64,000 nucleotides of DNA from Mizuhopecten yessoensis (lineage: Eukaryota), in assembly GCF_002113885.1 (NCBI RefSeq), contig NW_018406874.1, positions 812,713-876,712 of the forward strand, in the 5' to 3' direction. Numbering within the stretch: the first letter of the stretch is position 1; every line of letters starts with the position of its first letter. The position numbers and the translations under genes were made by a program. A model generated the notes under the pieces. It made no database searches. It had not been told where the DNA came from and saw only the letters and a list, made by a program, of their open reading frames with translations. Of the stretch, positions 1 through 22,614 are shown piece after piece.

Positions 1-190
1 CACTGTATATTGGTTACAGCATTGTTGAGCTGCTTATTACCACACACTATATTGGTTACAGCATTACTGAGCTGCTTATTACCACTCACTGTATATTGGT
101 TACAGCATTGTTGAGCTGCTTATTACCACACACTGTATATTGGTTACAGCATTACTGAGCTGCTTATTACCACACACTGTATATTGGTTA
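1..190. repeat. 44-bp minisatellite, about 4 copies, truncated by the window start
   Basis: Unit CACTGTATATTGGTTACAGCATT(GT/AC)TGAGCTGCTTATTACCACA repeated in tandem. Confidence 0.9.
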
Positions 191-479
191 TAACAACACA
201 CTGTTAGTTAGCTACAGCATTACAGAACTCAAAGTTCCTGTAAGTTTGTGATGTCATTACTGTGGCTGTCGGTACTGTTTCTGCACTCTTAAGTTTAGTA
301 CTACTTGTTGGTAATTCATATCTGTTTCTGGTTTAAGAACTATATATTTCAGTGACATGAGTAGTGTACAGTATTGTTAAACACAAGTCCTGTTGATGGC
401 AGAATTGTGAAGTTCAACACCAGTGCCAGTAGTGTTAATAACAGCGATGCTTAAGCTCAACAACGCTGGAGTTGGTTAC

Positions 480-1157
480 ACTTCTGTGAAGTAAAGCACC
501 ACCATTGCTTGCTACAGTGCTATAAAATTAAGCACCACCAGTGCTGGCTACAGTACTGTAAAGTTAAGCATCATCAGTGCTGGCTACAGTACTGTAAAGT
601 TAAGCACCACCAGTGCTGGCTACAGTGCTTTAACATTAAGCACCACCAGTGCTGGCTACAGTACTGTAAAGTTAAGCACCACCAGTGCTTGCTACAGTAC
701 TGTAAAGTTGAGTACCACAAGTGATGGACACAATACTGTAAAGTTAAGTATCACCAGTGCTGGCTACAGTGCTTTAAAATTAAGCACTATCAGTGCTTGC
801 TACAGTGCTATAAAATTAAGCACTACCAGTGATTGCTACAGTACTGTAAAGTTAAGCACCACCAGTGCTGGCTACAGTGCTTTAAAGTTAAGCACCACCA
901 GTACCAGTCACAGTACTGTGAATTAAGACCCACCAGTGATGGACACAATACTGTAAAGTTAAAGACCAACAGTGTTTGTCATTTTAATACTAAGTTAAGC
1001 ACTACCAAATGCTCGTCATAGCACAGCTATACCAGGTTAAACACAACTAGTGCTGGTCACAGTGTTGCTAAGTTAAGCACCACCAAATGCTGGTCATAGC
1101 ACAGCTATACCAGGTTAAGCACAACTAGTGCTGGTCACAGTGTTTCTAAGTTAAGCA
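480..1157. repeat. 36-bp minisatellite grading into a ~77-bp dimeric unit, immediately 3' of the FBXO22 stop codon
   Basis: Unit CAGTGCTGGCTACAGTACTGTAAAGTTAAGCACCAC. It explains the 12-aa periodic ORFs at 509-1021. Two ~77-bp copies lie at about 992-1157. Confidence 0.88.
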
Positions 1158-1170
1158 AATTGGTGTTATG

Positions 1171-4100
1171 TCATACTAGAGATACCATACATACAATGGT
1201 TGTGTATGCGTGGTAGAGTTTTGGGAGGGGCTTCGTCATCCCCCCCAGAATGGAGACATTATTGCTGGTAGAATTCCTATGTGAAGGATAAGTTGGACAA
1301 TTGTCACATGTCATATCTGAAGTCTCAGTCTGATACTTCTGTAGGAAGTTGAAACCAATTTCTCCATTGCCAAAGAAACCGAGCAATGGTGTCTTTGGAA
1401 ACATTTTCCTGAAGACTGATGATTCCACATTTTCACTGCCGTAGTGACCCTTGCCTCGTCCTAGACAGGCAAACATGAAGGCGTAACTCCTCTCCTCAGG
1501 TAAGTTACAGTCCTTGAGCTGCTTCAGTATTCTCTCCACTTCCTCAGGTCTGTGGATGTCTTCCTTGATGACTACTGAGGCCACCCTCACCTGTGGTCCA
1601 CACAGGGCCACGCACATCATGGACGCTGAGCCAGACTCGCTACAACATATGGCAATATTCCACTTTTAAATAGGTACAAAGTATGGAGACAAGTAATACT
1701 TTTATTTATAACTATTCAAAAACATGAGTATGTGTTTTTTTTTCCTTTTCACAATCACAACCAGTCATTGTCACATTGTATGTTTCGGTCAGTTCTGAAG
1801 GCAACAACTGACCTGTCACAGTCTTGTAATAGGTATTGCCCCGACTCTGGCCCTTCAATATCTGGTAAATAATGTTGGTTAATTTTATCAACTCTGACCT
1901 GTTAGCCTTTCATTTTGAGTCTAGATTAATTCTGGCCTCTCAGTATCTTTTTGTGGGTGTTGATTGATTCCGATGTCCATCTACCACACACATATTTCAT
2001 GGGATACATATCTTATGCACATTCTCAAAGAAAATTGATTGCAAATTCAGATATGTTGTGAAGATTTACTTAGTGAAGTGGTAACAAATATTACGACAAG
2101 ACTAAAACTAAAAATTACTAGCATTCGAAAAATTATGTCACACTGCATGAGGTCTCCAGAGTTTATCCTTACATACACTAGTCAGTATGTTGATAACTTT
2201 CACACATAGATCATGCAGTGTTTGTATTATGTTATAACATATCCATGTCCATGACTACACTAAAACAAACAGTATTCAACACCTTCCACATACCTGGCAG
2301 GGTCGTGTGGGTCGGGGTCAGAGGTTATGAGGTTATCTACATAGCCCCCAGCTATCACAGCTCCGTCGTACAGCTGTAACAGTGAGTAGCCAATCTCCGG
2401 GGGACAAAACGGCTCATCACAGAAGAAAAAGACGGCTTTTACTTCCTTGTCTGGCGGCACAGTGCTGAGTTCTGTCAGATATGTCAATCCAGAATGTGTT
2501 TCATCCATTTGATTTGCATAATTGTAAATGTCTACATTAAATGTAAAGAATTCCACCCCCTCGACATGTGGTAGAAAAAGACACGTGAGAGCCAGCTCGC
2601 TCTCCACCTCCGCAGTTCTCTTCAGATCTTTACTGGTACCTGGAACAGTCATAAATACCACAAGTGTGGGATACTTGGGTGAATCAAACTCACAGGATTA
2701 AATGTATTTACAAGGACTATACTTAACCCCCAGTTTTAACTACCTCAGCTTTAAAGTGGTGATTGAAAATACTCTGCTTTACGGAGTTCATTTCAAAGTA
2801 TTGAAAACAACATGAATCCTATGTAACATCAGCTCATGTCATTTTTATGAACAATTATAAGTTATTACACTAAGCTCAAATCAGTATTGGTTGCCATAGA
2901 AAGGGTAGGTTTCTATCGATTTGGGGCATGATTCATGGAAGGTGTCACTGTTACTAAAATTATCATTTTCTTCTCAGACTTGAACTTCAAAACAAAAGAT
3001 CACACAATGTCAAAGATCAGACGTGTTGTGTAAGATCCCCTGGTGAAGAACTTTTGGTATGATATGTTTTTTACATCATCTTATACCAATCTGTCCATAT
3101 AAAGTTTACAATATCTAATACATTCCGCATGTCACTCTGGAATTCAAACAAAATCACTTTGCACTCATGATCAACACCACAATCTTTTTGAAGGGACTAT
3201 TCTTTGTTTATATCTATATATATTTTTTTCAATTTGAAAGAAAATTGGCATTTTATATTTAAAACAACATTAATTAAACATTCACCAATAATCTAAAGCT
3301 ACAGTTGGCTCAATGTAAATAATATGTAAGCAATTATTTATTTTAGGAGTCAAACCTGCCTGTATCTGTAGGTTTTTAGAGCAAGTACTCTAATAATAGC
3401 CTACAACAGGTTACAAACACTACACAAGTAACACAAATAGCTGTAGCTTATCTTACACATTGATACCTACCCACAATGCCATCGGATGAAGCAGCCAGCA
3501 GTTTACAAGTCTTAGGTATCACCTTCCTCATTAGATCTCCTACACTGCTCAACATACACTTTGAAGCCCGTGGGTGTCGCATCTGGTGACGTGTGGGTAG
3601 TGGGATTTGCTGTTCAAACAACTGTGATGTACAGTACATAAAGAGAACACTGGGTTCTGTCCTTAGATCCTGTGTAAAACAAAACATTGGTATGTATCCT
3701 TGAAAAAACTCACTATAAAACTGTCACAGTAGGAAAACTATTAGTCATGTGTTGTAAAGCTTCTTTTACAAATAATATAGGGTGCTTTACAAATGTTGAA
3801 TATTATTATTGACAGTACAAATTTTGACAGATTCATCTACCCCTGTTTCACCTTTGTTTGATTTTCAGTATGGCAGTGAATTTAAATGTGGGTCAAATGT
3901 TTGAAGACCCCAAAGATTACATGCAGAATGGGCTTTACTAAATTGTTCAACGTGTAGTAGGGTCCAGATGGGGTTTGGGTGGAAAAGGAATTTGCAGGAA
4001 AAAAAAGTTTTGAACATTTTACCTGCACTGCAGACATAATCTCAGCAGCAAGTCCATCCAAACTCTCATCTTCATCATAATCAGCAAAAAAACATGACAT

Positions 4101-4775
4101 GCTCTTTCGCCTCTGTTTTAGTGATTTGGCAATAGTATTCCAGGTGCTACAGACCCTGTCAAAACAAAACAAAACTTCTGATCTCAAAGATAAGGCTTGT
4201 TAAAATAGCTGACTCCTTTTAAGATTTTTATGGCAAAGATATACTCTGGAACCTATTTTGGTAGTTAATTTCCAAAGGCCAGCATGTATAAAATAGGACA
4301 TGTTCGATTAATAAAACACAAAAAGAGCAAATAATGACTTAATTCCCGATTGTTTACCTCACAAGGAAATATGCTATGGCTTGGTGTGATATGAAGGTCA
4401 ATAATATTGATAATGGTCATTAGAGTGGTTTTCGGTTTCAACAAATTTTATTGTATTTACAAAAGGATGAGACAACAGGCAGTGTCTATATTAGTCTTCT
4501 CCTGAAACGGTACAACATATATATACATTTACAAAGAATAATAAGATATATTTACAAAATTATCGATAATTAATTACGCATTGAAATAAATTGACATTTA
4601 TATGGAAAATATGTATATATGTTTGAATAAATGATATGGCTGAATGTTTACACTACACACACTAATAACAAGGCTAACACTTCTACCAGTGGCGTAGATG
4701 ACTAGTACATTTTCGATGTTATGGTACAAGTACAAGTACTGCGTCTCTGGCAACGTACATACTTCTAAACACACA

Positions 4776-4808
<33 letters not shown>

Positions 4809-6412
4809 TCACAGAGCAGATTGATATAACGGGAAGTATTAGATAAAAATATACTAATCAAATTCGAGTTAGGTGAATCTATTAGTTAAATCAATAAATT
4901 TCTCAACTTTAGATAATATATAATTATTAGTTTCTGGTGATAGCTCATTATCTCCTGATGTAAGTAATTTCAGACTAATAAATCCTACTACATTATATAT
5001 TTCATAAAAATCCAGTCTGAATCAGAATTATTAGGACAAAAAAAGGAAAAATGATCAGCATCTTCGCGCAGTGCTCCACAAGAACAACTGCCATCTTGAA
5101 TAAGGTGATCAGTAAATTTATCGAAGTTTAAATCACTTGCTTTGTGCCTGATTTGACAGAGTATTATATTAAGATTCCTAGGATTGTACTGTTTAAAGAT
5201 CAGGGAAATATTATCTACAATGTACTTGATTATTATGATAGTTAGTAAGTCTATATTTGAACAAAGTAAGGGAATTAGCAGATGTTATAGAAGAATCTAA
5301 TAAGTTCCATAAGTTCATTTTATCAGGAAAGAAACTAGTGTTGTAGATATGAGTTCTAGCTTGAGGTACATTAAAGAATCTAGTATGCCTTAATCCATAT
5401 GGGTTATTAGCTTTATTAATAAAGGTACAATAATATTATAAAGATAGTCAGGTGTTAAGCGGTTTATTATCCTATACATTAGAATTGATTTATGTTTATG
5501 ACGTCTTAAACTTAAAGTTTCCATATTTACCTCAAGGTATAGTTTACGATGAGATGTCCCACTTCTTAATCCCGATATAATTTTCATAGCTTCAATTTGA
5601 ACAGATTCTAGCATATTAGAGTGGTTAATTGTAGTATGTTGTCATTTGTAACCCGAGTTTTTGATTTGAGAATGTGATATATATCTCCTTAGAATCTACT
5701 TAGATTTACATGCCGTTTGTCATCGATGAAGTAGAGATGCTATGTCCCTTCTGGAACACATGGTCGTATTCTCCTTGTATGTTTTGAGGGCAAATCTTTC
5801 CTTTTTCATACTCTGCCCTAGTTTTTTACAATTGATTCTTCAAGTCAAAAATATACATGTGGGTCATTCTAACAAGTAGATTCATTTATCACCTGGGTAT
5901 GATTTTACTGTGGATTACATTGTGTTGTGTAACGTTAATGTACATTCTATCACCTGGGTATGATTTTACTGTGGATTACATTGCGTTGTGTAACGTTACT
6001 GTACGTTATGGTTTATTTATTTCAAAATGTAGTTTGGTACCAGCTGCCTCTTTCTATGTTATTTTTAAAAAGAACTTAAAGACTTACCTGTACACAACTG
6101 ATCAAAAATATATTCGAGAAACAGAACTTTTCCTCAGACGTGAGGGGATACGTTAGGGTTCCTGTGCATCCCCTCAAGTAAGAGGATGTCCAACAATTCA
6201 ATCCGTTCTACTTTTGTTTCGTGTCGGGGTCTGAGAAGTTAGAACTACTGAAACTTATCCGTGGTTTCTTGCATGAAGATGTTTTTGTATATTATGAATA
6301 ACTACCTGGAACATGTGTTGAGTGATTTCGCTGATAGATTCTGCAATACCAGATTTGCTATCACTGGTATATTTAGGACGACAGCAGGCGATAGAATTGA
6401 AGCATGCTCCAT
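1171..6412 (-). CDS. FBXO22: F-box only protein 22 (F-box plus FIST domain), 5 exons, 417 aa
   Basis: Exons complement(6306-6412, 4023-4155, 3471-3669, 2294-2639, 1171-1639). All introns are GT-AG, phases are consistent, total 1254 nt. The N-terminal F-box reads LNIPVIANLVLQNLSAKSLNTCSR|VCSTWN. The C-terminal FIST-C motifs FMFACLGRG, FRKMFPKTPLLGFFGNGEIG and HAYTTIVCMV are characteristic of FBXO22. Confidence 0.93.
4431..5614 (-). mobile_element. 5'-truncated, degraded LINE (ORF2 C-terminus plus 3'UTR) in FBXO22 intron 1
   Basis: ORF2-like text LESVQIEAMKIISG...LYLEVNMETLSLRR, then SFFPDKMNLWN. The 3' end reads AATAAAATTTGTTGAAACC. A 12-bp target-site duplication ATTAGAGTGGTT lies at 4419-4430 and 5615-5626. 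Internal (CA)n at about 4770-4808. Confidence 0.85.
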
Positions 6413-6760
6413 TTTGAATGTTTACGTTTCCCAACCGATCACGTGATGTTCTAAAAATAAATACACATTAGGGGCATGTTATTTTTGTTGAAATATTTAT
6501 TTTCTACACATAGAATAAAATGTAATTTATCCTTGAATCGTAAAATCTAAATAACTAGGCCTATCCTATTCAAAAGGCATTTGGCATTTCGTGTGATATA
6601 AATAATCGACACCGTTCAAATGTTTGAAAAGCTCGAGAAAAGTTCAAGCATCTCAATGACAAAGCCAACTGGTTACAAGACGATAAAAAATGTTTACAAA
6701 TGGCTGGCTCTAATCGTGCAGTGCGTTAAATTAGACGCAGTCCCCGGTTAAAAACCAGAC
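6413..6760. promoter_or_regulatory. Probable bidirectional promoter between FBXO22 and the CCDC192-like gene
   Basis: Divergent ATGs at 6412 (-) and 6761 (+), about 350 bp apart. Palindromic E-box TCACGTGA at 6439-6446. Confidence 0.6.
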
Positions 6761-9700
6761 ATGGGGTCTGGGTATAGTAAATCTAGTCAGGTGCAGGCAG
6801 TTCATTTTGAACCAGAAGGAGACAAATCAGAGTCAAGGTATGCACGCCAGTTAATTTATTTTAGTCATGATTACAGTACCGACTATGGTCATGCCTTTTA
6901 AGTTTTGATGAGGCTGTACTGGCTTCAGAAGTATCAAGTCTCTACTTCTAGTATACAGACATCCTGGCCAATTGAATACCTGATCATTATGTATGATTTG
7001 CCTTCGAAAACAAATGTTATCAACAAACGCATGTCACTATGATCAATGGTGTTGGAAATCTGACTGTAAACTGAGATAAAAAAATCATATAAAAAAAAGA
7101 AGGGTATTACTTTAAGAAAATTACATTTTTATAGTATTTTTTTGCTATGATGGCATGTTTCCACAGTAGTCCAAAATATGAGACTGCGTACTGTAGCTAC
7201 AAATGTAGCTGGATGCGTTTTAAGGTGCTAGTGTGTATTGAAACCGTAAACTATAGACAAATGTTTCAACAACAGTTGTAGATACAACTGTACTTTCGTT
7301 TGTGAATTCAATTAATTAATTTATGGACTGATCTTATTTTAATCACAGACCATCTTCAGGCAGCGTCAAAAGGACCAAATCCAGGAGCTCCAAAGATGAG
7401 GTATAGCAATATGCCAACTTATATGTACTATAAACAATTCAAATGTCTATGTGCCGAAGAAAATAAGATAGACTAGATCAAGTCTGTAAGATGTGAATTC
7501 CCAACAGGGATTCCTTAGTCCTGTATTCCATACATGAGTAAATTTAATTCTTATTTATAGAGGAAGTGACTATATATGACATTTTACTGAAGACTTTCAG
7601 TTTGAAGCATCAATTCATTTAATTAAAATACATAATATTTAAATGCTCTTAATATTCGTAAAAGAATCATTAAATATGACTGAGGATGGGGACGGTATAG
7701 AAAGAGTGATGGCAAGCATTGTTAATATAAGGTAACAGTGATAATGAACTTGTATGCCAGTATCCAGAAATGCAAACATGTGCAAGCTAGGTTAAGATAA
7801 ATACCTGTCCAGTCTCCATATCTGTGCACGTTTACTGTGTATTCTAGGGAAGGACATTAAACACAGCCAAATTAAGGCAATGCTATGATAAACCAATAAG
7901 AGATCATTCAAAGCATTTTTACATCTGCTCAGTGCTGAACTTTCTTAAAAAATAAGTGTAACATTATTTATCAATGTCCAGATTAATTATTGTGATATCC
8001 AGTGGCCATAATGAGATATGCCACTGATATATATATTCATTTTACTTAAAAGACATAAACATAATCTCATAATACTGTGAAATAGAGTGGAAATAGACAT
8101 GTCAATATATTTTTGAGCAAGATAAATGTTCAAGTGAATATTGATTTTTTTGAAGAGTGGTGTAAATGAAGATGTGAAATTGAAAGAGGCAGAGAAGAGG
8201 ATTTTGGAGCTAGAAAAACAGGTAATGATGTTCCTGAAAAATTGTGTTCAGATTTTTATATCTTGAAAATCAGTTTATGTATACTCTTAGTCATCTTTGC
8301 TAGCCAAGGGTTAAGATCCGGTACGATCGACCTACTGTTCACTCTGGAGAGTAGGAAGACTGGATCATAACCCTTGGCTAGCGAAGATGACTCTTAGTAC
8401 ATATATATAACTTTACTTATGGCTTGTGAAAAAATATAACATACAGCAATTCTTATTATCACAGTTGTTAGTTCATATTATACACATGTTTATAAAAATT
8501 AACAATAAATAAATACTGTTTACTGGGAAATTTTCAACCAGTCAAACTTTCACCCTGCATCAGTGAAATCCATATTCACCGGCCAGTTTTAATTTTACCC
8601 TTCACATTTAATTACTGTGTTTATAATGTTGTTTACTAATGTTAGATGTAATGAAGAATTTGCCCTCATTACGGAGGATGTAAAATGCGAAAATGAAACT
8701 GCAGCAAAAATGACCTGGTATACAATTCAGCAACACCTCAGCCTTCCTTACATGTGTTTTTTCTACCCACGTACATGTTACCTTTAGTCGGCTGAGACAG
8801 AGAGTGAAAACCTTGATCTACAGGACCGTGTACAGGGGCTGGAGTGTCAGCTTGACCAGGCAGCTAGACTACAAACTGTGCAGGAACTTGAAGAGCCAGA
8901 AGATCTAACCGAGACCCTGAAAGCCAAGGACATGTCCATAGCTAATGCCGAGAAGGAAAAGAAAGCTCTCCAGACAGAATTAACAAAAATGGTAAACAAT
9001 AAACATTACACTGTTTATTAATATCAAGATTTTAATAATACTTTGTGAAATTTGTATTACTAACATAAGCAGTCTCCTTTGTTCTTTTCTCCATTTGTGT
9101 TCCTTGCATTGTCTTCATGTTATTTATGAATGGACTTGAGAGTCCACTTATTTTACTTTCATTTTAATCCCTACATGTCGCTTGTTACTAAAATTAATTA
9201 AAATCATTGCATAAAACAGCTTAAACGATTCACATTTATTATTTAATCTAGATAGGGTTATTGTAAGTATTATTTCAGACATTTTTTGTAAGATATTGCC
9301 AGGCAGTTTCTCCACCCTGAAAATATTCAAATACATTGTAGTTGGCAAATACCAAGGTATATATATACAAGTACAAGTGTTTGTTGGACGGTTAGAGCAC
9401 TTTACTATTGGTTTTGTTTCTAACAGAAAAACCGATACAGGAAGCGGATCAAGACTCTGATGAGCCAGGTGTCCGAGGCAAAACAGGAGCAGTCCATCCA
9501 AATGTTTGAGCTACGAGATGAAATCAGCCGGCTACGGGAGGAGAACAGGAAAGTTAGAGGTAATGATCATAAATAAAACAGATAGAAATGATAGGAAATC
9601 TAGGGTAACTCATCACACTAATACATTGTTTATGCTGATGATGTCACGCGCATGTATATAACTAAAATGTTTTAAAACATTTAAAAATGCACCAACACTG

Positions 9701-10687
9701 ATGATAACAGGTTAATTATATACCTCCCACACTTAATTTGACATCTTTTTGTACATTTTTTATGATGATGAACTATTACAATGGGTCTGACTAAAGATGT
9801 TGATCTTACATGTCCAGGCAATGCTGTACTATATTACCGCTTTTCTCCTTATTTCAGAAAAGAGCAATTCTGCCTCCAGTAAAACATCTGTTGAAGAGGA
9901 ACCTCCGGGTGGTAACAAAATGATGATTGTGGTGGAATTGTCCAATCAGGTTTCTGAGCAAGAAGATACAATCAACAAGCTGGAGAGAGAAAACAAAGAG
10001 AAACAGCTGATAATTGACAAACTTTTAGTTGAGTCTAAAAACGGAAGTAAATTAAAATATTTTCCCTCGCCGAGGAGAGAAGATTTAGAAAGAGAGAAAG
10101 AAACAGAGGAAAAGAATTCTTTACAGAAATTATCATCTGGACTAGGACAATATACAAAACCTCCTATGTCTGGAGGGAACAACAGAATGCCAGGAAATGA
10201 CATTGACTTTGAGGACGAACGAAATTGTTCTGGTGCTAGTCGTGACTCTGGTCTGGGATCTGCCAGCAGAAACGGCAGAAATCCTCCAAAGTTAACCTCA
10301 GGTTTATCCAAGCTGTCCACTCTGTCCGACTCGGATTGGGAATCAGATGAACCTTTGTCTGTACAGTCTAAAATCCGGAGTGCTCCAGCCGATGTCCATG
10401 CCAAAAGGACAGCCTCCAGGTGTAGTACAATTAGTTATAAAACCACAGAAGATGACTGTATATCTGTAGACGATAGTGCCTCGGTATCATCAATGACAAA
10501 GAAGTCAAAGAAAATGTCATACCTTCAGCGAAGGTTCCGACCAGAGATTGGACACGGAGACTCTACAAGATCACCACTGCCTACAATGAATGCATTTGAA
10601 AATGAGACTAGTTTACAAAGCAAACATTTTTTCCTCACACAGTCTGGTTCGCCTATCAGTGAATCTGACCCAGTACCAGCACATTGA
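6761..10687 (+). CDS. CCDC192: Coiled-coil protein, CCDC192-like, 6 exons, 453 aa
   Basis: Exons 6761-6837, 7349-7400, 8156-8221, 8788-8991, 9427-9559, 9858-10687. GT-AG introns, consistent phases, 1362 nt. Starts MGSGYSK. The segments LKEAEKRILELEKQ, KAKDMSIANAEKEKKALQTEL and KMMIVVELSNQVSEQEDTINKLERENKEKQLIIDKL match, from memory, the order and wording of vertebrate CCDC192 coiled-coil blocks. The gene model is firmer than the orthology call. Confidence 0.75.
8292..8389. mobile_element. 98-bp MITE with ~28-bp TIRs and a 9-bp TSD
   Basis: CATCTTTGCTAGCCAAGGGTTAAGATCC ... GGATCATAACCCTTGGCTAGCGAAGATG, flanked on both sides by ACTCTTAGT. Confidence 0.85.
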
Positions 10688-11811
10688 AAACAGCACCAAA
10701 CTACCCCCTTTAACACATTCCAACAACCTATTCCATTTAAAGACAGCTAGAAAACTGTTACTTTCTGCATTCCCTCAGTGTGAAGGTTTGAGGAATTATT
10801 ATTACATCATTAAATCTTCAAAAAGATTAGGAAAATGTTGAATATGTATTTGTGCTTATTGCTTATTGTAAGCCATTGTTTGATGTGACTGTATCCAGGT
10901 CACACATACTTTACAGAGAGATCATTTTAAGTTGTGTAACCTCAGTATACTTGTTGCCACATTTACATATAATAGGCATAAAGAGACAAATACATCCATG
11001 CTACCAGGCAACAGGTCCAAGCATCACTCTGGGGACTTAGTTCCTGCTTCATGTCTTTGAAATGGTTGAAATCTCTACCCTTAAACTACATATCACAATA
11101 GCTTAAATAACAAATACAACCATGCTACTAGGATCAGCCTTGGTGTCCAGCCATGCCCCTGATGTCTTAGTCTCTGGGTTATAACTTAGCATTGGTTGTA
11201 ATCATATTAACAATTGCTAGGCATGAAAAGATAAGCAATCATGCTACCGGGATGGCTACTAGGTCCAGCCAGGCCCCTGTAGGCTTAGTTCCTGGGTCAT
11301 TAAGTAAATAATTATACAGTTATAAGTACTAGGCATAAGAATAAGAAAGAGTCGTTGGGAGAAGGAAATAAAATGTTATTTAAAGTAAGGATCAAGTCCC
11401 AAAAATGGGAAATATTGAGAATTGATGATGTTTTGTTGTATGTTTCATTTACATATTAATAAAGGGTTATTTTTATCATGTGACAATCAGCTCAATGGTT
11501 TACTGTGATATGATCCATTAAGTCCAGGTGGTGCTGATACTGCTGCACATCAGCCTTACAATACCACTACATATGTTCAACCTTAGAGAGTGTGAGTTAT
11601 ATACAACAAAGGAATCGGGCGAGATGTGCTATGATGGTACATCTGCTCATAGTGTGGTTTATTTATATACACATGAATTGATTCTTCCTGTGTTAACTTA
11701 ATTATTAAACTGTTGATCATTTTTTCAATCAGAAGTGTTTGTTCTATATATCATTTTGTATTTGTGATCAACTTTTAGATATGTGCTTGAGTAGAATGAA
11801 ACAACAAAAAG

Positions 11812-12505
11812 AAACTAGAAACACTGAGCAAGCTCAAACAGACATATCCCCCGCTTGTACTTAACTTGTTTCTGGAGCAGAAGTCTCAAGGGCCACAATT
11901 CCATAAAAACAAGACAATTCGGCAAATTATAGTCCCCTACTGAATGTGAAATGCACAGATGATAAATTTGTGCAGAAACTCAATTCTATATATGAATGTT
12001 TGACAGACCCACAGCATTCAATTAGGAATAGTGTCAGCGACCTGGCCAAAAACAGAGTGACCTACTTTGATATACGACACACACCCTCACTAAGATGAAC
12101 CCATACTCCAAGTATAAAGTTCCAGTGACTAGTAGTGTAGGAGATAGAGCCTGGACAAACTTTTTCTTTGATGCAGGTCAAAGGTCAAAATCTTGGTCAG
12201 AGTGACCTACTTTTAATACACAACACACCACCTCACCAAGGTGAACCCATACCCCAAGTATGAAGTTCCAGTGACTAGTAGTGTAGGAGATAGAGCCCGG
12301 ACAAACTTTTTCTTTGATGTAGGTCAAAGGTCAAAATNNNNNNNNNNNNNNNNNNNNNNNNNNNNNNNNNNNNNNNNNNNNNNNNNNNNNNNNNNNNNNN
12401 NNNNNNNNNNNNNNNNNNNNNNNNNNNNNNNNNNNNNNNNNNNNNNNNNNNNNNNNNNNNNNNNNNNNNNNCCCCCCCCCCCGGTTCCCAGTGGGGGACT
12501 AAAAA
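11812..12505 (+). mobile_element. HINE/Helentron-like non-autonomous element with central ~146-bp tandem repeats (spans assembly gap 12338-12471)
   Basis: 5' AAACTAGA start, two ~146-bp internal repeats with GGTCAAAGGTCAA motifs, and a 3' hairpin CCCCC..GGGGG followed by an A-run. Confidence 0.65.
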
Positions 12506-12559
12506 TAAAACAACTAGTTGAATCATGAATCTCTTCCTTCATGCATGTGGTGTATTTTT

Positions 12560-12665
12560 ACTGTGTCAAGTTACGAAAAATCAACCAAGGGTTAATGAGA
12601 AGTTTAGGAGACAGACAGGCTGATTCCTATATACCCCCATAAACTGTTTGCAGGGGGTATAAAAT
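12560..12665 (+). mobile_element. 3' fragment of a HINE-like element
   Basis: GACAGACAGG microsatellite, then hairpin TATACCCCC...GGGGGTATA and an A-run. Confidence 0.55.
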
Positions 12666-13134
12666 AAATAAAAACCAAAAACAGAAATTCCTGGGGCCTT
12701 ACTCAGGACTTTTCCTCTTCACTCATACACTTAACCAATGTCTGAATAACTTGCAAAGAAAATTAGCCCAAAGCCACAAAATCTCTTTTAGGTTGCCTTG
12801 TCTTTTCCTATATACAAGGGAGAATACTCCAAGTTAAAAAAACACCTGGCAACTAATATTCTTGTAGTTAAGATATTTGACGGACGCAGACATAATTTGC
12901 CACCCTGTCCATATCTTAAATATACTATTGAGATTGATCCTTATTTGACATTTCATATTCTGATACATACGCTAGATTGGCAAGGCCTAATATGGGAAAT
13001 GTTGGGACCCGGGAGGGGGCGTGATACATTTTAAAAGGTTACATATAACTACAGATTAAGAGATTTCAATTATATTTGGCATAAAGCAAAATCTCTAAGC
13101 AAAAAGGTTCATTCATTATTTTATAAATACTGAG

Positions 13135-13258
13135 TGAGCCCCAATAGGGGAACGGGAAGGGCCTATGCCCAATAGGGGAACGGGAAGGGCCCAATAGGGG
13201 AACGGGAAGGGGAACGGGAAGGGCCCAATAGGGGAAGGGGAAGGGCCCAATAGGGGAA
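13135..13258. repeat. Purine-rich minisatellite (GGCCCAATAGGGGAACGGGAAG) inside a degenerate dispersed repeat
   Basis: About 5 imperfect tandem copies are directly visible. Confidence 0.75.
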
Positions 13259-16166
13259 AACCTTTATAATACTTCTCATAGAGTATGGCAGGAGGAATGT
13301 TAACATTACATGGAGTAAAGCATATCTCTCAAACAAAGTAGAGGCAATTCAATTTTGTATAATAAAATGTGTGGGCTCAATCAGGTCGTAGAGGAGTTGG
13401 GGCTCAATAGTAAAAGTTAGGGGTTATCATTTAACTTCTCAGTATGAGTAAAGGGATCTTAACCTTATGTAGGATATTAAAGCAATTCTCAACCAAGGGA
13501 AATAATTGTTTTATAAGAACACATGTTTTCCTCATGGGGGCAGATTGTATAGGGTTCAATAAGGGAAATGGTGGTTACTATTTAAACACTATTCCTTATA
13601 TACAGTTGAAAGAGTTTTAGTCTAATTTTGTATGAACCATATCGCTTTAAGTTCAGTTCTGTCCAGTGTGAGAGTTTTAGTCCTTTGTGGTAAATAGTAC
13701 ACAAATTGGGCTCCAGCAAATAGGTAAGACTGTTCTGTTTAGTTGATAGCTATAATGTTTTTGATTGAATAGGCTTACAAGCACATTATAGAAGTTCAGT
13801 TTTCATCTTTACACTTTGCATTGTAAAAATAGATCCCTGATTATACTTATAATATTGCTGAAATGTGATATTTTTCACCTGTAGGTTATATAAGTAGTGT
13901 ATTGTTATGAATTAGATGGATTATTTTCTACCTGTACAGGTATTTAACATAACCGATGCAGTTAACTTATCTTTCATTAATAATGTATCTATTAACATTT
14001 TCCTTTATTGTTCATCTATAATGCACGGATATCACTTGTGTTTCAGTTTTAACACTTTAAAAAAATTGCTGCATTAATTTCCCACTTTCACTGGTTTGGC
14101 AGACCTCATGCACTATGTCATCAGAAGGAAATGTAATCAATTAAACAAATAACATATGTGTATATGCTAAGTGCTTTAATTTTCCCTGATCAACTAACTA
14201 TCAATGTTGATACCTGATGGATATTTGAGAAACATTGACCTTTAAAAAAAATCAAGATAATTTTAATGCTGTGGTGTTTACAAGGCCATACATGTCAATC
14301 AAACTCAGGTTGATAATACTAGGGCAAAATATAAATAAAGGAAAGAATTATGATTAACATTGAGAGTAAGCTAGGTCAATATATTGTGTATTTCAGAATT
14401 TTGCTTTTTTTTAATAGAAGAGTTATTGTCCTTTGTTTATATCAAAAAAATGTTTGGAGCATATATACCGTCTTTGCTCTTTTAGCTGCATTCACCAAAC
14501 TTGCTATACTTATGTCTTCGGTTGATGGAGTGTCACATATACTATACTCAGGTCTCCTGTGCCACTTTATACAGTCCCACAGGGGTGGGGTTAGAGCACC
14601 ACTTTTTTTTGCTAATTCACATACATTTACCACACTTATAGCACATTTGTACCTTTGGAAAGCAGTGTTGCACACTTGTGTTTTGTGGACCCTTTCTTTC
14701 AGTTATGAAACTTCATTCATTTTAAACACGTTTTTCTTTGTGATGTTTTAAAATATAAGTAAAGGACGATAAACTCGATTCAAATTGTTTTTGAAATTGT
14801 AAAACAAAATTAGAACACCTTGTCTTTTCCCTTTGGCTAATAAAGTAAAACATGCATCACGGTTTCCCAATTTTAACACAATTTATAATTAAACACATGC
14901 AACGTTTGTAGTTACATATGTCTAAATTGTGTTGAAATTGAGAAAGCATAATTCATGAGCAATTATAAGAACCCTACATCAGTATCTATTTCATTTGATT
15001 GTTTTCATTCACTGTGGCCTATTGAGTGTTAACAACTGCATGTGATACTCATCTATGTTAACTTAAACAACTTAAAGTTTACTCTCTCTATAAAGGAATT
15101 GAAATATGTTTGATATCCGTTTTTTTGGAAATAAAGTTGCCGTGTATAGATGACCTCTGTGTGGCCAAGCTGATACTAAGATTTAGTGTGTAACAGTAGC
15201 TGATATGAGCTGAAGATAAGCTACCTTGCCACTTGTACAGATAGTTATGGCACTTTGTTTTGTTCCTTGACCTAAATTGCCATACCTAATGTGATATGTG
15301 TCAGACCCCTAGTGTTGTCTATGATGTGCAGGCTACTGTATGAGTCCATGTTTGTAAGTATTTTTAACAACACTCAGGGGGGATACAAAAAGTAAAGGAA
15401 AATAAAGATCATGGAGAAAATGTATCGTCTTCTTAACAGAAATATAGTGAAATGTAACAGATGCATGCATGTTAAATAATCTTTTCAGTGCGGAGGGGGG
15501 GNTTATACAAAAAAATAGCACATTTACCAAAACCATTTAGAAAACATTTCTAATTTGATTCTAATGTAAAAAGTATTTCATTGAATATTTTTTTCCTCCA
15601 ATGATTATATTGATATGCACAATATAAATTAAAAATATGACGTAAATAATTGAAAATGTTTTATTCAATATGTGCGATCTACAGTAAAAATTTGAATATT
15701 TTCTCATATGTATTCCCCAGAAAGATTATATATTATCCATGTTTGTTTTGCACATGCAATTGAGAAATGTGTGATATGTTTTTGAACATGTGCACATATA
15801 CAAGACAGATTTTGTCACCAGATATGTGACAGTTTTATCCTCAAATGTCTCCATGTCTGTATAGGTGTACTTCAATGGAATCCACTTATACCAAGGTGGT
15901 TTTCTCAACACTTACAAAAATTATATTTCATGCTTAAAATGTTGATATCAATAACTTCTACACAAACAGTTAAGTGGTAACACTTCCAGAAACAAAAACC
16001 TACCAGACCTTCTCTCATCCAAGTGTCCTTGCTTTCCATCTTTCTGATATTTTCTGTACGTATACAACTATAAGATTTGATTTACTATAAATGATTTCAG
16101 CCGTTGATGGAACACATCTGTGACACATTCAGGAGCACCTAACCAGAACAGCTTTGTGACGAGGCG

Positions 16167-19100
16167 ATGGAGAGTGTTTACGATGTAGTAATTATAGGAG
16201 GTGGGGTGGTAGGCTGTTCCCAGTTGTTCACACTAACGAGGCTCGGCTACAGGTGTCTACTTCTGGAGAAGGAAGCCCACCTAGTGTCCATGGCAAGCTC
16301 CGGAAACAGGTATAAAATTCTATTATGATGGTACCGCCGCATTAGTGAATCTATTCAGAACCTGATCATTTATAATCGAAAAATGTATAGTAATTGATGC
16401 AGTCTTCAAAATAAGTTTCTGAGAATGTTGTTTTTGTAATTCATGGTGTTTTTTTTTTTGTTTTTTTTTTATTTGAGGTTATTTTCAGTTTCAAGTCCAT
16501 ACCCTATTCCCATAGGATCAATTTGTTTTCAAAAGCATCTGGGTATCCAAATTATGCAGATCAAACAAGAGTCCCTGATTTGCTCACCTGGATATTTGAG
16601 CAATCATGGGAAGACATTCTTAACAAAAGTACATTTAAAAATATTACCATATATTGAGTATCCTTCACTTAAGAATGGTCAAGACTAAATAAAACTTTAT
16701 ACTTCTCTATCTCAGCATGATACTGGTCAACTAGCATCACACAGGGCCCCCTGGTATTGTGGAAGAAGCTGCTTAAAGATATTTACATATTTGACCCCTG
16801 TGACCGTGAAAGTAGGTCAAGGTAATTTATTTGGGGAAACTTTATAGCACTCCAAGTCTGTCCCAGGTACCTACTGGCCAGGAATCAGTACTCTGCGCCT
16901 CCTGGTTATTCTGAAGAAATTGTTGAAAGGTTTTTACATATTTGACCCCTGTGATCTTGAAAGTAGGTCAAAGTATATCACTCTGTCAAAGGTACCTACT
17001 GGTCAAGTATTATTATTCTGGGCCTCCTGGTCTTGACAGTTTCCACGTTAAGTTCCTAGGGATGGAGTAGACCTCAGGCATATTTTGTAGCATTTGTGTA
17101 TTCATCTCTTCATGTCTTGCAATTGAATATAAGAATATAGGGTGGATATCTTCATTGTTTCCATGTTATAACCCAGGCATCAAGTGCCAAGGGGAGTGGG
17201 GGACCAAGCCTTGCATCACGATGTTTCTTTGTACCTAGCAAGATGAGAATCTCAACTATGCTCATGTATGACCTCTCCCCCCATCTATTCCAGAGATGTC
17301 ATTTATAGCAATAATACCAAATTATCACTTTTTTGCCCTTTCCTACCTTATTTGGGGTCAGCCCCTCCATTTGTACAATTTTGAACCCCTGCCACCTAAG
17401 GATGTTTCCAGTCAAATTTGTAAAGGTGACAGATCGACCAAGAAGGGATGAATCATGATATTTAATAAACTGAACATACTTCATTGGTGACCTTTCTGCT
17501 GTTTCTGTTATAGTGGGATGTTAAATACAGGTTTTGATGCTATTTCTCTGTTATAGTGGGATGTTACATACAGGCTTTGATGCTGTTTCTGTTATAGTGG
17601 GATGTTACATACAGGTTTTGATGCTGTTTCTCTGTTTTAGTGGTATGTTACATACAGGTTTTGATGCTGTTTCTCTGTTTTAGTGGTATGTTACATACAG
17701 GTTTTGATGCTGTTTCTCTGTTGTTATAGTGGGATGTTACATCCAGGCATTGATTCTATTTCTACGTTATAGTGGGATGTTACATACAGGCTTTGATGTT
17801 ATTTCTCTGTTATAGTGGGATGTTACATCCAGGCATTGATGCTATTTCTACGTTATAGTGGGATGTTACATACAGGTTTTGATGCTGTTTCTGTTATAGT
17901 GGGATGTTACATACAGGTTTTGATGCTGTTTCTCCGTTATAGTGGGATGTCACATACAGGTTTTGATGCTGTTTCTGTTATAGTGGGATGTTACATACAG
18001 GTTTTGATGCTATTTCTCTGTTATAGTGGGATTTTACATATAGGCTTTGATGCTGTTTCTGTTATAGTGAGATGTTACATACAGGTTTTGTACTGTTTTT
18101 CTGTTATAGTGGGATGTTACATACAGGTTTTGATGCTGTTTCTGTTATAGTTGGATGTTACATACAGGTTTTGTTGCTGTTTCTCTGTTATAGTGGGATG
18201 TTACATACAGGCTTTGATGTTATTTCTCTGTTATAGTGGGATGTTACAAACAGGTTTGGATGCTGTTTCTCTGTTATAGTGGGATGTTACATACAGGTTT
18301 TGATACTGTTTCTGTTATAGTGGGATGTTACACACAGGTTTTGATGCTGTTTCTGTTATAGAGGGATGTTACATACAGGGTTTGATACTGTTTCTGTTAT
18401 AGTGGGATGTTACATGCAGGTTTTGATGCTGTTTCTGTTATAGTGGGATGTTACATACAGGTTTTGATGCTATTTCTCTGTTATAGTGGGATGTTACATA
18501 TAGGCTTTGATGCTGTTTCTGTTATAGTGGGATGTTACATACAGGTTTTGTTCTGTTTTTCTGTTATAGTGGGATGTAACATACAGGTTTTGAAGCTATT
18601 TCTCTGTTATAGTGGTATGTTACATACAGGTTTTGATGCTGTTTCTCTGTTATAGTGGGATGTTACATACAGGTTTTGATACTGTTTCTGTTATAGTGGG
18701 ATGTTACATACAGGCTTTGATGCTCCATTGGGAAGTATAGAGCATGCCAGTATACTAAGATGTCAACAGCAGATCCTACCTGTCCTCAACTCCCTTGGGC
18801 TTCCATACTCTAAGATTGGTGCAACTATGGTAGCCTGGAACAATCAACAGGTAAAATTCCATCATTTCCTTACATCTTAAACAAAAATTGATATTCAAAG
18901 ACAGAGAAAAATGTGATGTTTGTTAAAAAAAAATGTGTCATCTGGATTATTTTTAATCTTTCATTTTATGTTTGTCTCATGAAAAATCCTTGATCCACAC
19001 CTGGCCAAAATGTCTTATTCTGTCCCATTGGATTTAACAGTGGTTGTGGTTTCACTTATACAATATGTGGTTGATTAATGATGTCTTAAATTTCAATTAT

Positions 19101-22100
19101 TTAAGTGTACAAGTTCCATGTTTGACTTACTGTGTGGATTTTAAATGTACCAGATTTTAATCTTACAGAAAGAGAAACTCCCTGAAGTGCTTCAGAAAGC
19201 AAAGGATGCTACGATAGAAGACATTGTGGAGTTATCTATGTCACAGCTCTACCAGATGGAGCCACATTTAGCCCTCGGAGCAACAGGTGCTCTCTGGATA
19301 CCAACAGAGGCAGTTATTGATCCATGGCTTACACCTATTGCTTTTGCGCATCATGCAAAATCATTAGGTGCTAAGGTACAAGTTGTTCTTTAGAATGGTG
19401 ATTTGGAGAATTTACTGTTGCATTTTGAAAAGACCTCCTGAAAATAACGATAACTTTTAAATCTTTTCAAATTGTAAAGAAGCAAGGATTTTTTTAAATA
19501 GTGGACATAGATTTTAACATACAGAACTTTTATTTGCAACCCCCAACCTCAAAACTGACAAGCCCAAAGTAAAACTAAGATACATTGTGAATCTGCCGTT
19601 AGTTTCCTAAATACTGTTTATAGGGTAGTAATATTACTGTGTGCTCACTAACCATTGTATTTTGTAAAAAAAAAAATCAAATCTGAAGACTCTTGTGTAT
19701 TAGTTATTTATTCTATTTCTGGCTCATCGGACATCCCTGTACGCCATTGTAGGTGTTGACAAGTACAATGGCCCAGAGCTGCGAACTGGATGGCCAGGGG
19801 ATCTGGAAAATCTCTACAACCAGAGGTGTGTTCCAGGGTCGCGTGGTCATCAACAGTGCTGGTCTGTATGGAGATGTGGTCGACAAACTGGCAGGAGTCC
19901 AGAAGTTCAGGTCAGTCTATCTGACAGGTCAGCTTCGAAGATAACCTGGGCTAGCATAGTTTCTAATTAAGTCACTTATAATTGGCATGGCAATGTATAT
20001 GTCTTTGTATATGATGGCCTTTCATACCTTATTCTAGCTGTTGTGTTGTAGGATCAAGCCGAGAATGGGACAGTACCTTATCTACGGCTCAGAAACCCAG
20101 TCGCTCATCAACAGCAGCATTCTCCCCATCCCCACCGAGAAGACCAAGGGAGTCATTGTATTCAAGTCAGGTCTGTGTAGAACATTATTCCGATCCCCAC
20201 CAACTAAACCAAGTGTTATATACGGGAATTCAGGTTCATGTGAATACAAACATTATTCCAATCCCCACCAACTAAACTAAGAGTCATATTGAATTCTGGT
20301 TCATATAGAACTTAAATATTATTCTAATCCCGATCAACAGTGAACTAAACCAAGGGAGACTGGTACGTGTAGAAATATTAATCCAGTCCTCACTAAGTAA
20401 ACTAAAAGGATTAATATTCATGTGTATTCCAGGTCCATGTAGATACAATATTCTGAACCCCACCAACTCAACCACGAGTGTCATCCTTCAGTGCTTAATC
20501 TTAAAAACAGCTTTCAGTTTTAAGTCAATGATAAGTTTCTTAATATATTTCATAAATATTTTAGTTTCATTTGTCGTTTAATGAAATACAGCCCATAATT
20601 TTATCCTTCCAGAAACCAATCCTGACATGTAAAACTGTGTTGACTGTGGAGGTATCAATACCTTCTCATGGATCCTCCTTCAGTCACCGTCACATGGTGG
20701 AATCCCCCACATTACTGCTGCAGAGGGGCTGTTCTCAAGGTCATTTATATTGTTTACATTCTGTGTACTTTCAGTGTATGACAATGTGATAATCGGCCCG
20801 ACACAAGAGGAGACTGAGCAGCGTACCATACCAGTTAGGCTCTCACAGGGGGTGGTGAACAGTTTACTGAATCACGGAAAAGTCACGGTCCCTTCTCTCC
20901 AGTCACACCCTGTAGTGCACACGTACTCTGGTACACGCCCTGCTACAGAAACCAAGGACTACCATGTGGTCCCCCACACTGACAGGTAAATATACTCCCC
21001 TCCCCTCTATTTACACACTGTAGTACACTCCGATATGCATCCCACTACATTGTACAAAGACTCAGAACTACGATGTGATCCCCAACACGGACAGTAAATA
21101 TTGCTTCTCCTCATTGGTCACACCCTGTATTACTTACCCCACCATAGAAACTAAGGACTGCCAAAGCTGACAACAAAACTTTGTCCCTTCCGGTCCTGTG
21201 ACTCCCTGTAGTGCTCACTGGTAACAATTATGTGCCCTACTTCCGACACCCGTACCTAATACCGCTATTTTCACATCCCATAGTAAACACCCTTGCACAC
21301 CGCCCCTGCTACCGAGACAAGGTAAATATTGCACCCCCAATCTCCTGATATACCCTGTAGTATACAGACACACTCTGATACATGTCCTGAAAAAAAAACA
21401 AGAGTATCGCGGGGCGGAACAAAATACGTATAGTGTTATATTCTTTCTTACATTGAAATAAGATCTGCATCATTCTAAGAGTGGTTAGCTGATATGCTAG
21501 TAAAAAATGTAGGAGAAAATCTTCGGACAAAAAATCAAATACTGAAATGAGCAAAAGGCAATAAATTTTGCAAAAATCGTCATATCAAGATTCTTTTCAT
21601 GGAGACACAACTTCATATCATGATTATAATGTATACCAAGTTTCAAAGAGAACGGCCGAAAAATGAAGGAGGAGATCTCCGGACAAAATTCAAATACCGA
21701 AATAAACAAAGGGCAATAGCTTTTGGAAAAATTGTCGAATCAAAATTCTTTTATGGGAGACACAACTTCATATCATGATTATAATGTATACCAAGTTTCA
21801 AAGAGATCGGTCGAGAAATGTAGGAGGAGATCACCGGACAAAATTCAAATACTGAAATGAACAAAGGGCAATAACTTTTGGAAAAATTGTCGGATCCAAA
21901 TTCTTTTAAGGGAGACACAACTTCATATCATGATTATAATGTATACCAAGTTTCAAATAGATCGGTCGAAAAATGTAGGAGGAGATTGCCGGACAAAGTT
22001 TACGCTGGACAGACGGACGGACGGACAGACAACACCATACCATAATACTACTGTCAAATTTGACGGTCGTATAAAAACAAAACCGGGTCTTTATATTTTT

Positions 22101-22614
22101 ACATACCCATACCTAGTTCCTGTACTGTCACACCCTAGGGTAATACCCTGTACTGCATTCTCCACTAAAATACACTATGGTACTACCCATTTTGAAACAT
22201 GACATGTCCAGTGTGATCTTGTTTATCTGGACAATCCTTATGTTATCATCAGGCAAAAGTGCACCTTTAACTTTCAACTTATCCTTCTTAATACATGACC
22301 AACCATCATTCCAGCATACACACAACTGTCCCAGCCTCTGCAGTATCTCGTGTCCTTACAGGAAATGGTTGACCCTGGGAGGTATACGCTCCACAGGCTT
22401 GTCCTCCTGTCTGGGTGTGGCCGACATGGTGGTTGGGATCATGAAGAACAAGTTCTGTCTGGAGCCTTCTAACAGTCCTAGCATGCACATCCCAAAAATA
22501 GACATCAGCTTCACGAACCATCGTACGGCAATGCTTGGATCGGAGGAGTACACGGTCACACACCCACTTACCTACACTGCCAAGTTTGACAGGAAAGTCT
22601 GGGCCGGTTTGTGA
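16167..22614 (+). CDS. FAD-dependent oxidoreductase, DAO superfamily (glycerol-3-phosphate oxidase GlpO/GlpA- or LhgO-like), 7 exons, 414 aa
   Basis: Exons 16167-16309, 18697-18850, 19169-19375, 19753-19910, 20052-20170, 20775-20985, 22362-22614. GT-AG introns, consistent phases, 1245 nt. Motifs: YDVVIIGGGVVG (Rossmann fold), LLEKE, ASSGNSGMLHTGFD, EAVIDPW, VINSAGLYGD, IKPRMGQY, PIPTEKTKG, GPT, YSGTRPA, GGIRSTGLSS. Confidence 0.9.
16562..17450 (+). mobile_element. Degenerate HINE-like element(s) in intron 1 of the oxidoreductase gene
   Basis: AAACAAGAG...GCTCACCTG start. ~151-bp internal repeats with TTTGACCCCTGTGA..TGAAAGTAGGTCAA. The segment at 17340-17420 resembles 23450-23670. Confidence 0.55.
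17496..18724 (+). repeat. Mostly 41/43-bp tandem array (29 copies) of the exon-2 splice acceptor junction
   Basis: Unit (GC)TGTTTCT(CT)GTTATAG|TGGGATGTTACATACAGG(T/C)TTTGAT. The last copy runs directly into coding exon 2 (SGMLHTGFDAPLGS). Confidence 0.95.
20118..20486 (+). repeat. Degenerate ~65-bp tandem copies of the exon-5 3' end plus donor
   Basis: The exon end CATTCTCCCCATCCCCACCGAGAAGACCAAGGGAGTCAT..TCAG|GTCTGTGTAGAA is echoed about 5 times, e.g. CATTATTCCGATCCCCACCAACTAAACCAAG..TCAG GTTCATGTG. Confidence 0.75.
20900..21389 (+). repeat. Degenerate ~100-bp tandem copies of the exon-6 3' end plus donor
   Basis: Exon text CACCCTGTAGTGCAC...GACTACCATGTGGTCCCCCACACTGACAG|GTAAATAT is echoed as AACTACGATGTGATCCCCAACACGGACAGTAAATAT, GTCACACCCTGTA..AGAAACTAAGGACT and CCCTGCTACCGAGACAAGGTAAATAT. 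Confidence 0.7.
21396..22077 (+). mobile_element. HINE/Helentron-like element carrying about 3 x 155-bp central tandem repeats
   Basis: AACAAGAG start. Repeats at 21611/21766/21921 (period 155). (GACG)n microsatellite, 3' hairpin ACTGTCAA-AT-TTGACGGT and an A-run. Confidence 0.8.

What the first reader, a model, noticed from the sequence alone, without database searches (positions are those of the whole stretch)
17496..18850. A splice acceptor amplified 29 times, with only the last copy productive
Seen: the array unit is the true intron-1/exon-2 junction of the oxidoreductase (pyrimidine tract + TAG + the first ~27 nt of exon 2, encoding GMLHTGFDA). I count 29 acceptors from 17514 to 18697. 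In 43-nt units the next unit's TAG is an in-frame stop, and 41-nt units shift the frame. Any upstream acceptor in frame with the real exon must meet TAG at 18653-18655 or earlier, and copy 28 is frameshifted. Simple splicing therefore yields protein only from copy 29. Inference: the spliceosome must bypass 28 near-identical decoys, probably through exon definition of the 154-nt exon. Otherwise the array diverts transcripts into NMD, so copy number would act as a heritable expression rheostat.
Basis: partly seen in the sequence, partly recalled or inferred. Interest (0 to 1): 0.88.

Follow-up and report, generated by a model that had tools for sequence, protein, structure and literature searches.

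The report
Splice-acceptor "mirage" minisatellite in scallop oxidoreductase
One intron of a Yesso scallop oxidoreductase gene ends in 29 tandem copies of its own splice acceptor and exon start; the few RNA reads available splice only at the last copy, so this is most likely an ordinary, tolerated example of a known repeat type ("mirage" minisatellites) and not a shown expression control.

Summary
The array is real: 29 tandem 41-46-nt copies of the intron-1/exon-2 junction (17497-18724) in a 7-exon FAD oxidoreductase gene of Mizuhopecten yessoensis. In single-step splicing only copy 29 (18697) keeps the frame. Three RNA reads from one run join exon 1 to 18697 and none lie on copies 26-28; that depth cannot exclude NMD-hidden use of the decoys. 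Copy 29 is among the weakest acceptors by a site matrix, so position (nearest the exon-2 donor) probably decides. The decoys show no coding constraint. Pecten maximus and four other molluscs have no array at this acceptor; Ylistrum balloti has an independent 59-nt array there; other junction-copy arrays sit at different boundaries of this gene in Mizuhopecten, Pecten, Ylistrum and abalone. This fits fast, lineage-specific turnover, not a conserved device. The kind is described (amphioxus "mirages", including an acceptor/exon-2 case; human F7 IVS7), and this scan has found many such arrays elsewhere in this genome. The NMD rheostat is unsupported but not refuted (about 8%). Verdict: new member of a known kind, low interest.

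The parts
16167..16309 (+). Exon 1 of the FAD-dependent oxidoreductase gene (DAO family PF01266, glycerol-3-phosphate-dehydrogenase-like, LOC110453104); donor after 16309
   Evidence: exon-1 end seen as the loose end of reads at 18695
17487..17513 (+). Native intron-1 3' end in front of copy 1: branch-point-like TGAC at -24, pyrimidine tract, TAG. Only copy 1 keeps the unduplicated upstream context
   Evidence: motif match; branch point inferred, not mapped
17497..18724 (+). 29-copy minisatellite. Unit = about 16 nt of intron end + TAG + about 25 nt of exon 2; both edges fall in a shared 4-nt TGCT; weak 84-nt (41+43) higher-order period
17514..18696 (+). Decoy copies 1-28; each gives a premature stop if used in one step; 9 carry an exact 17-nt exon start followed by GT (formal micro-exon)
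18697..18850 (+). True exon 2 (154 nt); acceptor is copy 29, and its nearest branch-point-like TTGAT (-18) comes from the exon-derived part of copy 28
19169..19375 (+). Exon 3
19753..19910 (+). Exon 4
20052..20170 (+). Exon 5
20171..20460 (+). Decayed copies of the exon-5 end plus donor in intron 5
   Evidence: score 32, above the null maximum of 26
20775..20985 (+). Exon 6
20986..21400 (+). Decayed copies of the exon-6 end plus donor in intron 6
   Evidence: score 34, above the null maximum of 26
22362..22614 (+). Exon 7 up to the stop codon

Best explanation
A 'mirage'-type exon-boundary minisatellite, tolerated and largely neutral. Origin (inferred): a 41-nt duplication across the intron-1/exon-2 junction between two TGCT microhomologies, followed by expansion through unequal exchange and small slippage in the CT/T tract (41 to 43-46 nt). 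Because the duplication leaves one intact exon at the 3' end, the protein is unchanged. Splicing (shown at low depth): exon 1 joins the last acceptor. Why (inferred from exon-definition work in human cells): only copy 29 is followed by the whole exon and is the acceptor nearest the strong exon-2 donor, in a long-upstream-intron layout where the site nearest across the exon is favoured. Rare decoy use would give premature stops far upstream of later junctions and be cleared by NMD; this makes the array cheap to carry, and does not make it a regulator.
For: 3 reads join the exon-1 end at 18695-18697, and depth in that bin (1.06 x 82 = 87 = 3 x 29 bases) leaves no read upstream; zero depth on 18560-18641. 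The annotated 414-aa protein uses copy 29. Copy 29 scores 6.2 as an acceptor against 5.5-11.3 for the decoys, so strength does not explain the choice. Decoy exon parts carry 4 synonymous and 14 non-synonymous distinct variants against 14:58 possible, i.e. no coding constraint. No array at this acceptor in Pecten, Mytilus, Pinctada, Mercenaria or Haliotis; junction copies sit at different boundaries in each lineage. Same architecture in amphioxus BflGb6, reported not to interfere with splicing (PMC3087553, PMC3902484); human F7 uses only the exon-proximal site (PMC1557585); proximity across the exon (PMC9225289). TRF arrays cover 18% of the window.
Against: Only 3 junction reads, one run, possibly 2-3 molecules; upper 95% bound on upstream use in steady-state RNA is about 63%, and NMD targets are depleted. 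Copies 26-28 would give exons of 195-281 nt, within the usual exon-definition range, so some leak is plausible. In human data the exon-definition mode reduces, and does not always reverse, the preference for the upstream 3' site. An independent array at the same acceptor in Ylistrum is not explained by pure chance placement, though one recurrence is weak. Neutrality itself was not tested.
Confidence: 0.8

Rival explanations
1. Expression rheostat: decoy acceptors divert a share of transcripts into NMD in proportion to copy number, so array length tunes enzyme level.
For: All 28 decoys keep TAG and give premature stops; several score higher than the real site; the same acceptor was amplified independently in Ylistrum; gene expression was very low in the runs laid (15 reads in 4 runs).
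Against: 0 of 3 reads use a decoy and none lie on copies 26-28. Keeping AG is not surprising, since 10 of 26 exon-side columns are also invariant. In Ylistrum 3 of 6 decoys have lost the AG, including the nearest. Absent in five other molluscs. Published mirages give no aberrant mRNA (PMC3902484).
Confidence: 0.08
2. Intron birth by tandem duplication (Rogers model): exon 1 joins an upstream copy, a 17-nt micro-exon ends at the in-unit CAG|GT, and that donor joins the internal CAG at 18713, rebuilding the same mRNA.
For: An exact spliced aligner found such a path with the identical protein; 9 copies carry the exact 17-mer plus GT and 3 plus GC; the mechanism is demonstrated elsewhere (PMC3265369). 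Mature reads cannot tell this route from direct splicing.
Against: The internal CAG scores 0.8, below 41 of 42 real acceptors, and lies 17 nt behind an intact TAG; the donor CAG|GTTTTG scores 4.5, above only 3 of 42 real donors. No read shows a micro-exon joined to 18697.
Confidence: 0.04
3. Assembly artefact: the array was created or inflated by the assembler.
For: Only one assembly was seen (L001 is the same assembly); no DNA reads were laid across the array.
Against: 24 of 28 units differ, with shared and private variants and four unit lengths; no N inside; similar arrays occur in the orthologs from three other assemblies. The exact count of 29 may still be off.
Confidence: 0.03
4. Origin-side rival, compatible with the best explanation: exon-intron boundaries are preferred seeds for such duplications (a splicing-, transcription- or chromatin-linked mutational bias), so the same sites are hit again in different lineages.
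For: 6 of 36 boundaries of this gene in three scallops and 1 of 48 in four other molluscs have a local junction copy above the null maximum (Fisher p = 0.04); independent amplification of the same acceptor in Mizuhopecten and Ylistrum.
Against: One gene, chosen because of the array; without the focal boundary p = 0.16, and at the looser threshold p = 0.19. No TRF array overlaps the approximate exon blocks of the neighbours CCDC192 and RBM8A. Repeat-rich genomes (14-27% in these loci) and purging of exon-internal duplications could give the pattern without targeting.
Confidence: 0.25

Closest known systems
Amphioxus 'mirage' minisatellites (Adh3; globin BflGb6 and BflGb9; PGBD5) - PMC3087553, PMC3902484
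   Same: Tandem copies spanning an exon-intron boundary; BflGb6 copies the 3' end of an intron plus the 5' part of exon 2, exactly this layout; unit within the reported 10-160-nt range; most copies keep AG; regular splicing is kept.
   Different: Here in a scallop, 29 copies against 3-6 in BflGb6; haplotype and somatic length variation, shown in amphioxus, was not tested here.
Human F7 intron-7 37-bp VNTR - PMC1557585
   Same: Minisatellite whose edge unit holds the real splice site, followed by identical pseudo-sites that stay silent; the exon-proximal site wins by position.
   Different: F7 is donor-side with 5-9 copies, and selection was dissected by mutagenesis; this is acceptor-side with 29 copies and only 3 reads of evidence.
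Intron gain by tandem genomic duplication (Rogers model; ATP2A1) - PMC3265369
   Same: The duplicated unit contains an AG|GT that could serve as a new donor and acceptor.
   Different: Here the duplication includes the old acceptor, which outcompetes the internal AG; no new intron is evident.
Poison-exon / AS-NMD regulation (own knowledge)
   Same: Alternative acceptors that would introduce premature stops upstream of later junctions.
   Different: Regulatory poison events are observed in RNA and usually conserved; neither holds here.

Membership tests
Mirage (exon-intron-boundary minisatellite) | Head-to-tail repeats whose unit spans the gene's own exon-intron junction | tested here: met
Mirage (exon-intron-boundary minisatellite) | Minisatellite-sized unit (10-160 nt reported) with most copies keeping the splice dinucleotide | tested here: met
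   41-46 nt; AG in 29 of 29; range from PMC3087553
Mirage (exon-intron-boundary minisatellite) | One intact exon remains at the array edge and regular splicing uses it | tested here: met
   3 of 3 junction reads at 18697; annotated protein identical. Low depth.
Mirage (exon-intron-boundary minisatellite) | No aberrant transcripts from the pseudo-sites | tested here: inconclusive
   none seen, but only 3 informative reads and no NMD block
Mirage (exon-intron-boundary minisatellite) | Length polymorphism between haplotypes or somatic instability | not tested
   only one assembly available; the single read-laying run went to RNA
Intron gain by tandem duplication | Duplicated AG|GT available as new donor and acceptor | tested here: met
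   CAG|GT in most units; formal path found
Intron gain by tandem duplication | The new intron is actually spliced | tested here: inconclusive
   mature mRNA would be identical; both sites score poorly
AS-NMD regulatory (poison) element | Premature-stop isoform seen in RNA | tested here: inconclusive
   0 of 3 reads
AS-NMD regulatory (poison) element | Element conserved in orthologs | tested here: not met
   absent in Pecten, Mytilus, Pinctada, Mercenaria, Haliotis; Ylistrum array has a different unit and half its AGs are lost
AS-NMD regulatory (poison) element | Isoform rises when NMD is blocked | not testable with these tools
   needs a knockdown or inhibitor experiment

The most novel reading that the evidence does not exclude
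The decoys are used at an appreciable rate hidden by NMD, so array length is a heritable dial on this enzyme's level, and the independent amplification of the same acceptor in Ylistrum reflects repeated recruitment of such a dial in scallops.
Probability: 0.08. Interest if true: 0.65.

Novelty: new member of a known kind. Interest (0 to 1): 0.17.

Why it matters
As it stands it matters little: one more large mirage array in a genome that has many. Its use is as a natural test of 3' splice-site choice. There are 28 near-identical decoys, several scoring higher than the real site, which lets position be separated from strength, much as F7 did for donors. If copy number were shown to tune mRNA through NMD, such arrays would be a common, fast-mutating source of expression variation in a farmed species.

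Tried and rejected
Selection to keep decoy AGs: rejected as unshown, since 10 of 26 exon-side and 5 of 10 intron-side columns (two of them the AG itself) are also invariant. Coding use of decoy exon parts: rejected, variants are random with respect to codons and include a stop. RNA structure hiding the decoys or exposing copy 29: none, z = +0.8 for 18560-18860. Copy 29 winning by strength: rejected (rough matrix from 42 junctions of this gene in 7 molluscs). Scallop-specific enrichment: not established (p = 0.04 to 0.19 depending on threshold and on whether the focal site is counted; abalone has one too). Shared ancestry of the Mizuhopecten and Ylistrum arrays: rejected, units are 41 against 59 nt with different breakpoints, and their intron parts align no better than chance (score 17). 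No second M. yessoensis haplotype or further scallop genome was on record; look-ups for Ostrea and Branchiostoma failed. The original amphioxus Adh3 paper was not held, so it is cited only through PMC3087553 and PMC3902484. Host exons for other arrays in 34-64 kb could not be identified.

Full report
Observation. Tandem Repeats Finder gives 29.1 copies at 17497-18724. Each unit holds a short pyrimidine tract, TAG and the first 25 or so bases of exon 2; there are 29 acceptors with first exon-like bases from 17514 to 18697. Unit lengths are 41, 42, 43 and 46 nt and 24 of 28 units are distinct. Joining exon 1 (16167-16309, phase 2) to each acceptor in a local script gave a premature stop for copies 1-28 and an open frame only for copy 29.

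The gene and organism. Exons were searched one by one by reference; I left the joined-model search out. Exon 1 hits the DAO family PF01266. A 414-aa protein annotated from Mizuhopecten yessoensis (P0153, LOC110453104) matches the exons at 100%, and the gene region of its contig is identical to window 16167-22614, so the window is from that assembly. I compared only that N-free gene region and did not look up any letters at N positions. The gene has seven exons with the same intron positions in six other molluscs.

RNA. I laid four raw RNA runs from four studies on 18560-21000, which holds copies 26-29 and exons 2-6; I left the bulk of the array out because the tool turns away long repeats. Expression was very low: 7, 4, 0 and 4 reads. 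In run X19 three reads have a loose end before 18695 whose consensus is the end of exon 1, which with the shared AG is the junction 16309 to 18697. Depth in bin 18642-18723 equals exactly three reads over 18695-18723, and 18560-18641 has none, so no read lies on decoys 26-28, where reads from any upstream acceptor should collect. Three reads make random choice among 29 sites very unlikely, but allow up to about 63% upstream use at 95%, and say nothing about transcripts removed by NMD.

Anatomy and origin. Both edges of the array fall in the same four bases, TGCT, found 41 nt apart in the native intron end and in the exon. This fits a first duplication between microhomologies followed by unequal exchange; this step is inferred. 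Copy 1 keeps the native upstream context with a branch-point-like TGAC at -24. The working acceptor, copy 29, keeps only about 16 nt of native intron, and its nearest branch-point-like motif, TTGAT at -18, derives from exon sequence in copy 28 (motif match only). In the exon-derived parts of the decoys 4 distinct variants are synonymous and 14 are not, against 14 and 58 possible, so there is no coding constraint. A site matrix from the 42 junctions of this gene in seven molluscs scores copy 29 at 6.2, and the decoys at 5.5-11.3, with copies 27 and 28 at 9.5 and 8.4. No unusual RNA fold was found. Position, not strength or structure, is therefore the likely reason for the choice. In human transcripts, exons behind long introns favour the 3' site nearest across the exon more than intron-defined ones do (PMC9225289); carrying that over to a scallop is inference.

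A formal loophole. An exact spliced aligner rebuilt the same protein through a 17-nt micro-exon in an upstream copy and the internal CAG at 18713. Nine copies have the exact 17-mer followed by GT. This is the tandem-duplication route to intron gain (PMC3265369), also noted by a first-stage reader (s1-528265). It is unlikely: the internal CAG scores below 41 of 42 real acceptors and sits behind an intact TAG, and the donor scores above only 3 of 42. Mature reads cannot exclude it.

Relatives. Pecten maximus has no array at this acceptor but a 54-nt repeat across the exon-3 donor. Ylistrum balloti has seven 59-nt copies across the same acceptor with only about 7-10 exon bases, different breakpoints and AG lost in 3 of 6 decoys, plus junction copies at the exon-5 and exon-6 donors and a 92-nt array ending 14 nt before the exon-6 acceptor. 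Mytilus, Pinctada and Mercenaria have none above the null maximum; Haliotis rufescens has 40 copies of its exon-2 donor junction, set off from the exon by about 300 nt. In the window the same gene has decayed donor-side copies after exons 5 and 6. So junction arrays come and go at different boundaries in each lineage. The counts (6 of 36 in scallops, 1 of 48 in others) give p = 0.04, but 0.16 without the focal site and 0.19 at a looser threshold, and approximate exon blocks of the neighbouring CCDC192 and RBM8A genes overlap no TRF array. I do not claim enrichment from this.

Known kind. [quoted passage not shown] Human F7 intron 7 is the donor-side case, where only the exon-proximal site is used (PMC1557585). 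I reached this reading from the paper search before consulting the scan's notes. Those notes list many similar acceptor and donor arrays elsewhere in this genome, several followed up to the same verdict; they are unchecked AI notes and I use them only as context. My paper searches found no description of mirages in scallops, within a library that lacks most subscription journals.

Verdict. Observation confirmed; interpretation partly supported. Best reading (0.8): a tolerated mirage minisatellite with positional choice of the last acceptor and NMD as a safety net. The rheostat is possible but without support (0.08). New member of a known kind; interest 0.17.

Noticed in passing
L003:10481-10894 (Ylistrum balloti ortholog): Independent 59-nt x 7 array across the same intron-1/exon-2 acceptor; 3 of 6 decoys, including the nearest, have lost AG.
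   Followed up: yes
L007:3899-5207 (Haliotis rufescens ortholog): 33-nt x 40 array copied from the exon-2 end plus donor, separated from the exon by about 300 nt of other sequence.
   Followed up: partly
L002:12330-12461 (Pecten maximus ortholog): 54-nt repeat across the exon-3 donor, absent in Mizuhopecten and Ylistrum.
   Followed up: partly
L003:13313-13776 and 14000-14255: 92-nt x 5 array ending 14 nt before the exon-6 acceptor, and a decayed array across the exon-6 donor in Ylistrum; Mizuhopecten has decayed copies at the same donor.
   Followed up: partly
window:20171-20460 and 20986-21400: Decayed copies of the exon-5 and exon-6 ends plus donors in the same gene.
   Followed up: yes
window:18715: The third base of the Gly codon is C in the real exon and in 7 decoys but T in 20 decoys and in Pecten; the working exon start may exchange sequence with the array, which could move unselected variants into a conserved motif.
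   Followed up: partly
window:37521-38562: 31-nt x 34 array whose minus strand carries a strong donor-like motif in most units; host exon not identified.
   Followed up: no
window:52502-54559: 33-nt x 62 array with an acceptor-like CAG|G in each unit; host exon not identified.
   Followed up: no
window:43885-44242 and 45595-46205: Decayed arrays rich in donor-like motifs; the first ends right at the acceptor of a Cys-rich exon-like stretch at about 44247-44320.
   Followed up: no
window:25400-33790 (minus strand): An RRM gene that reads as RBM8A/Y14, a core exon-junction-complex protein, lies tail to tail with the oxidoreductase in all three scallops; probably only conserved synteny.
   Followed up: no
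window:20139: G>C in RNA reads of two studies, a Glu-to-Asp change in exon 5; most likely an allele (Ylistrum has Asp).
   Followed up: no
window:20610-20900: Two read pairs in run X22 run unspliced from intron 5 into exon 6 (pre-mRNA or retention).
   Followed up: no
window:56338-56765 and 58755-58960: The same 86-nt unit occurs in two separate places; the second contains an N, left as it is.
   Followed up: no
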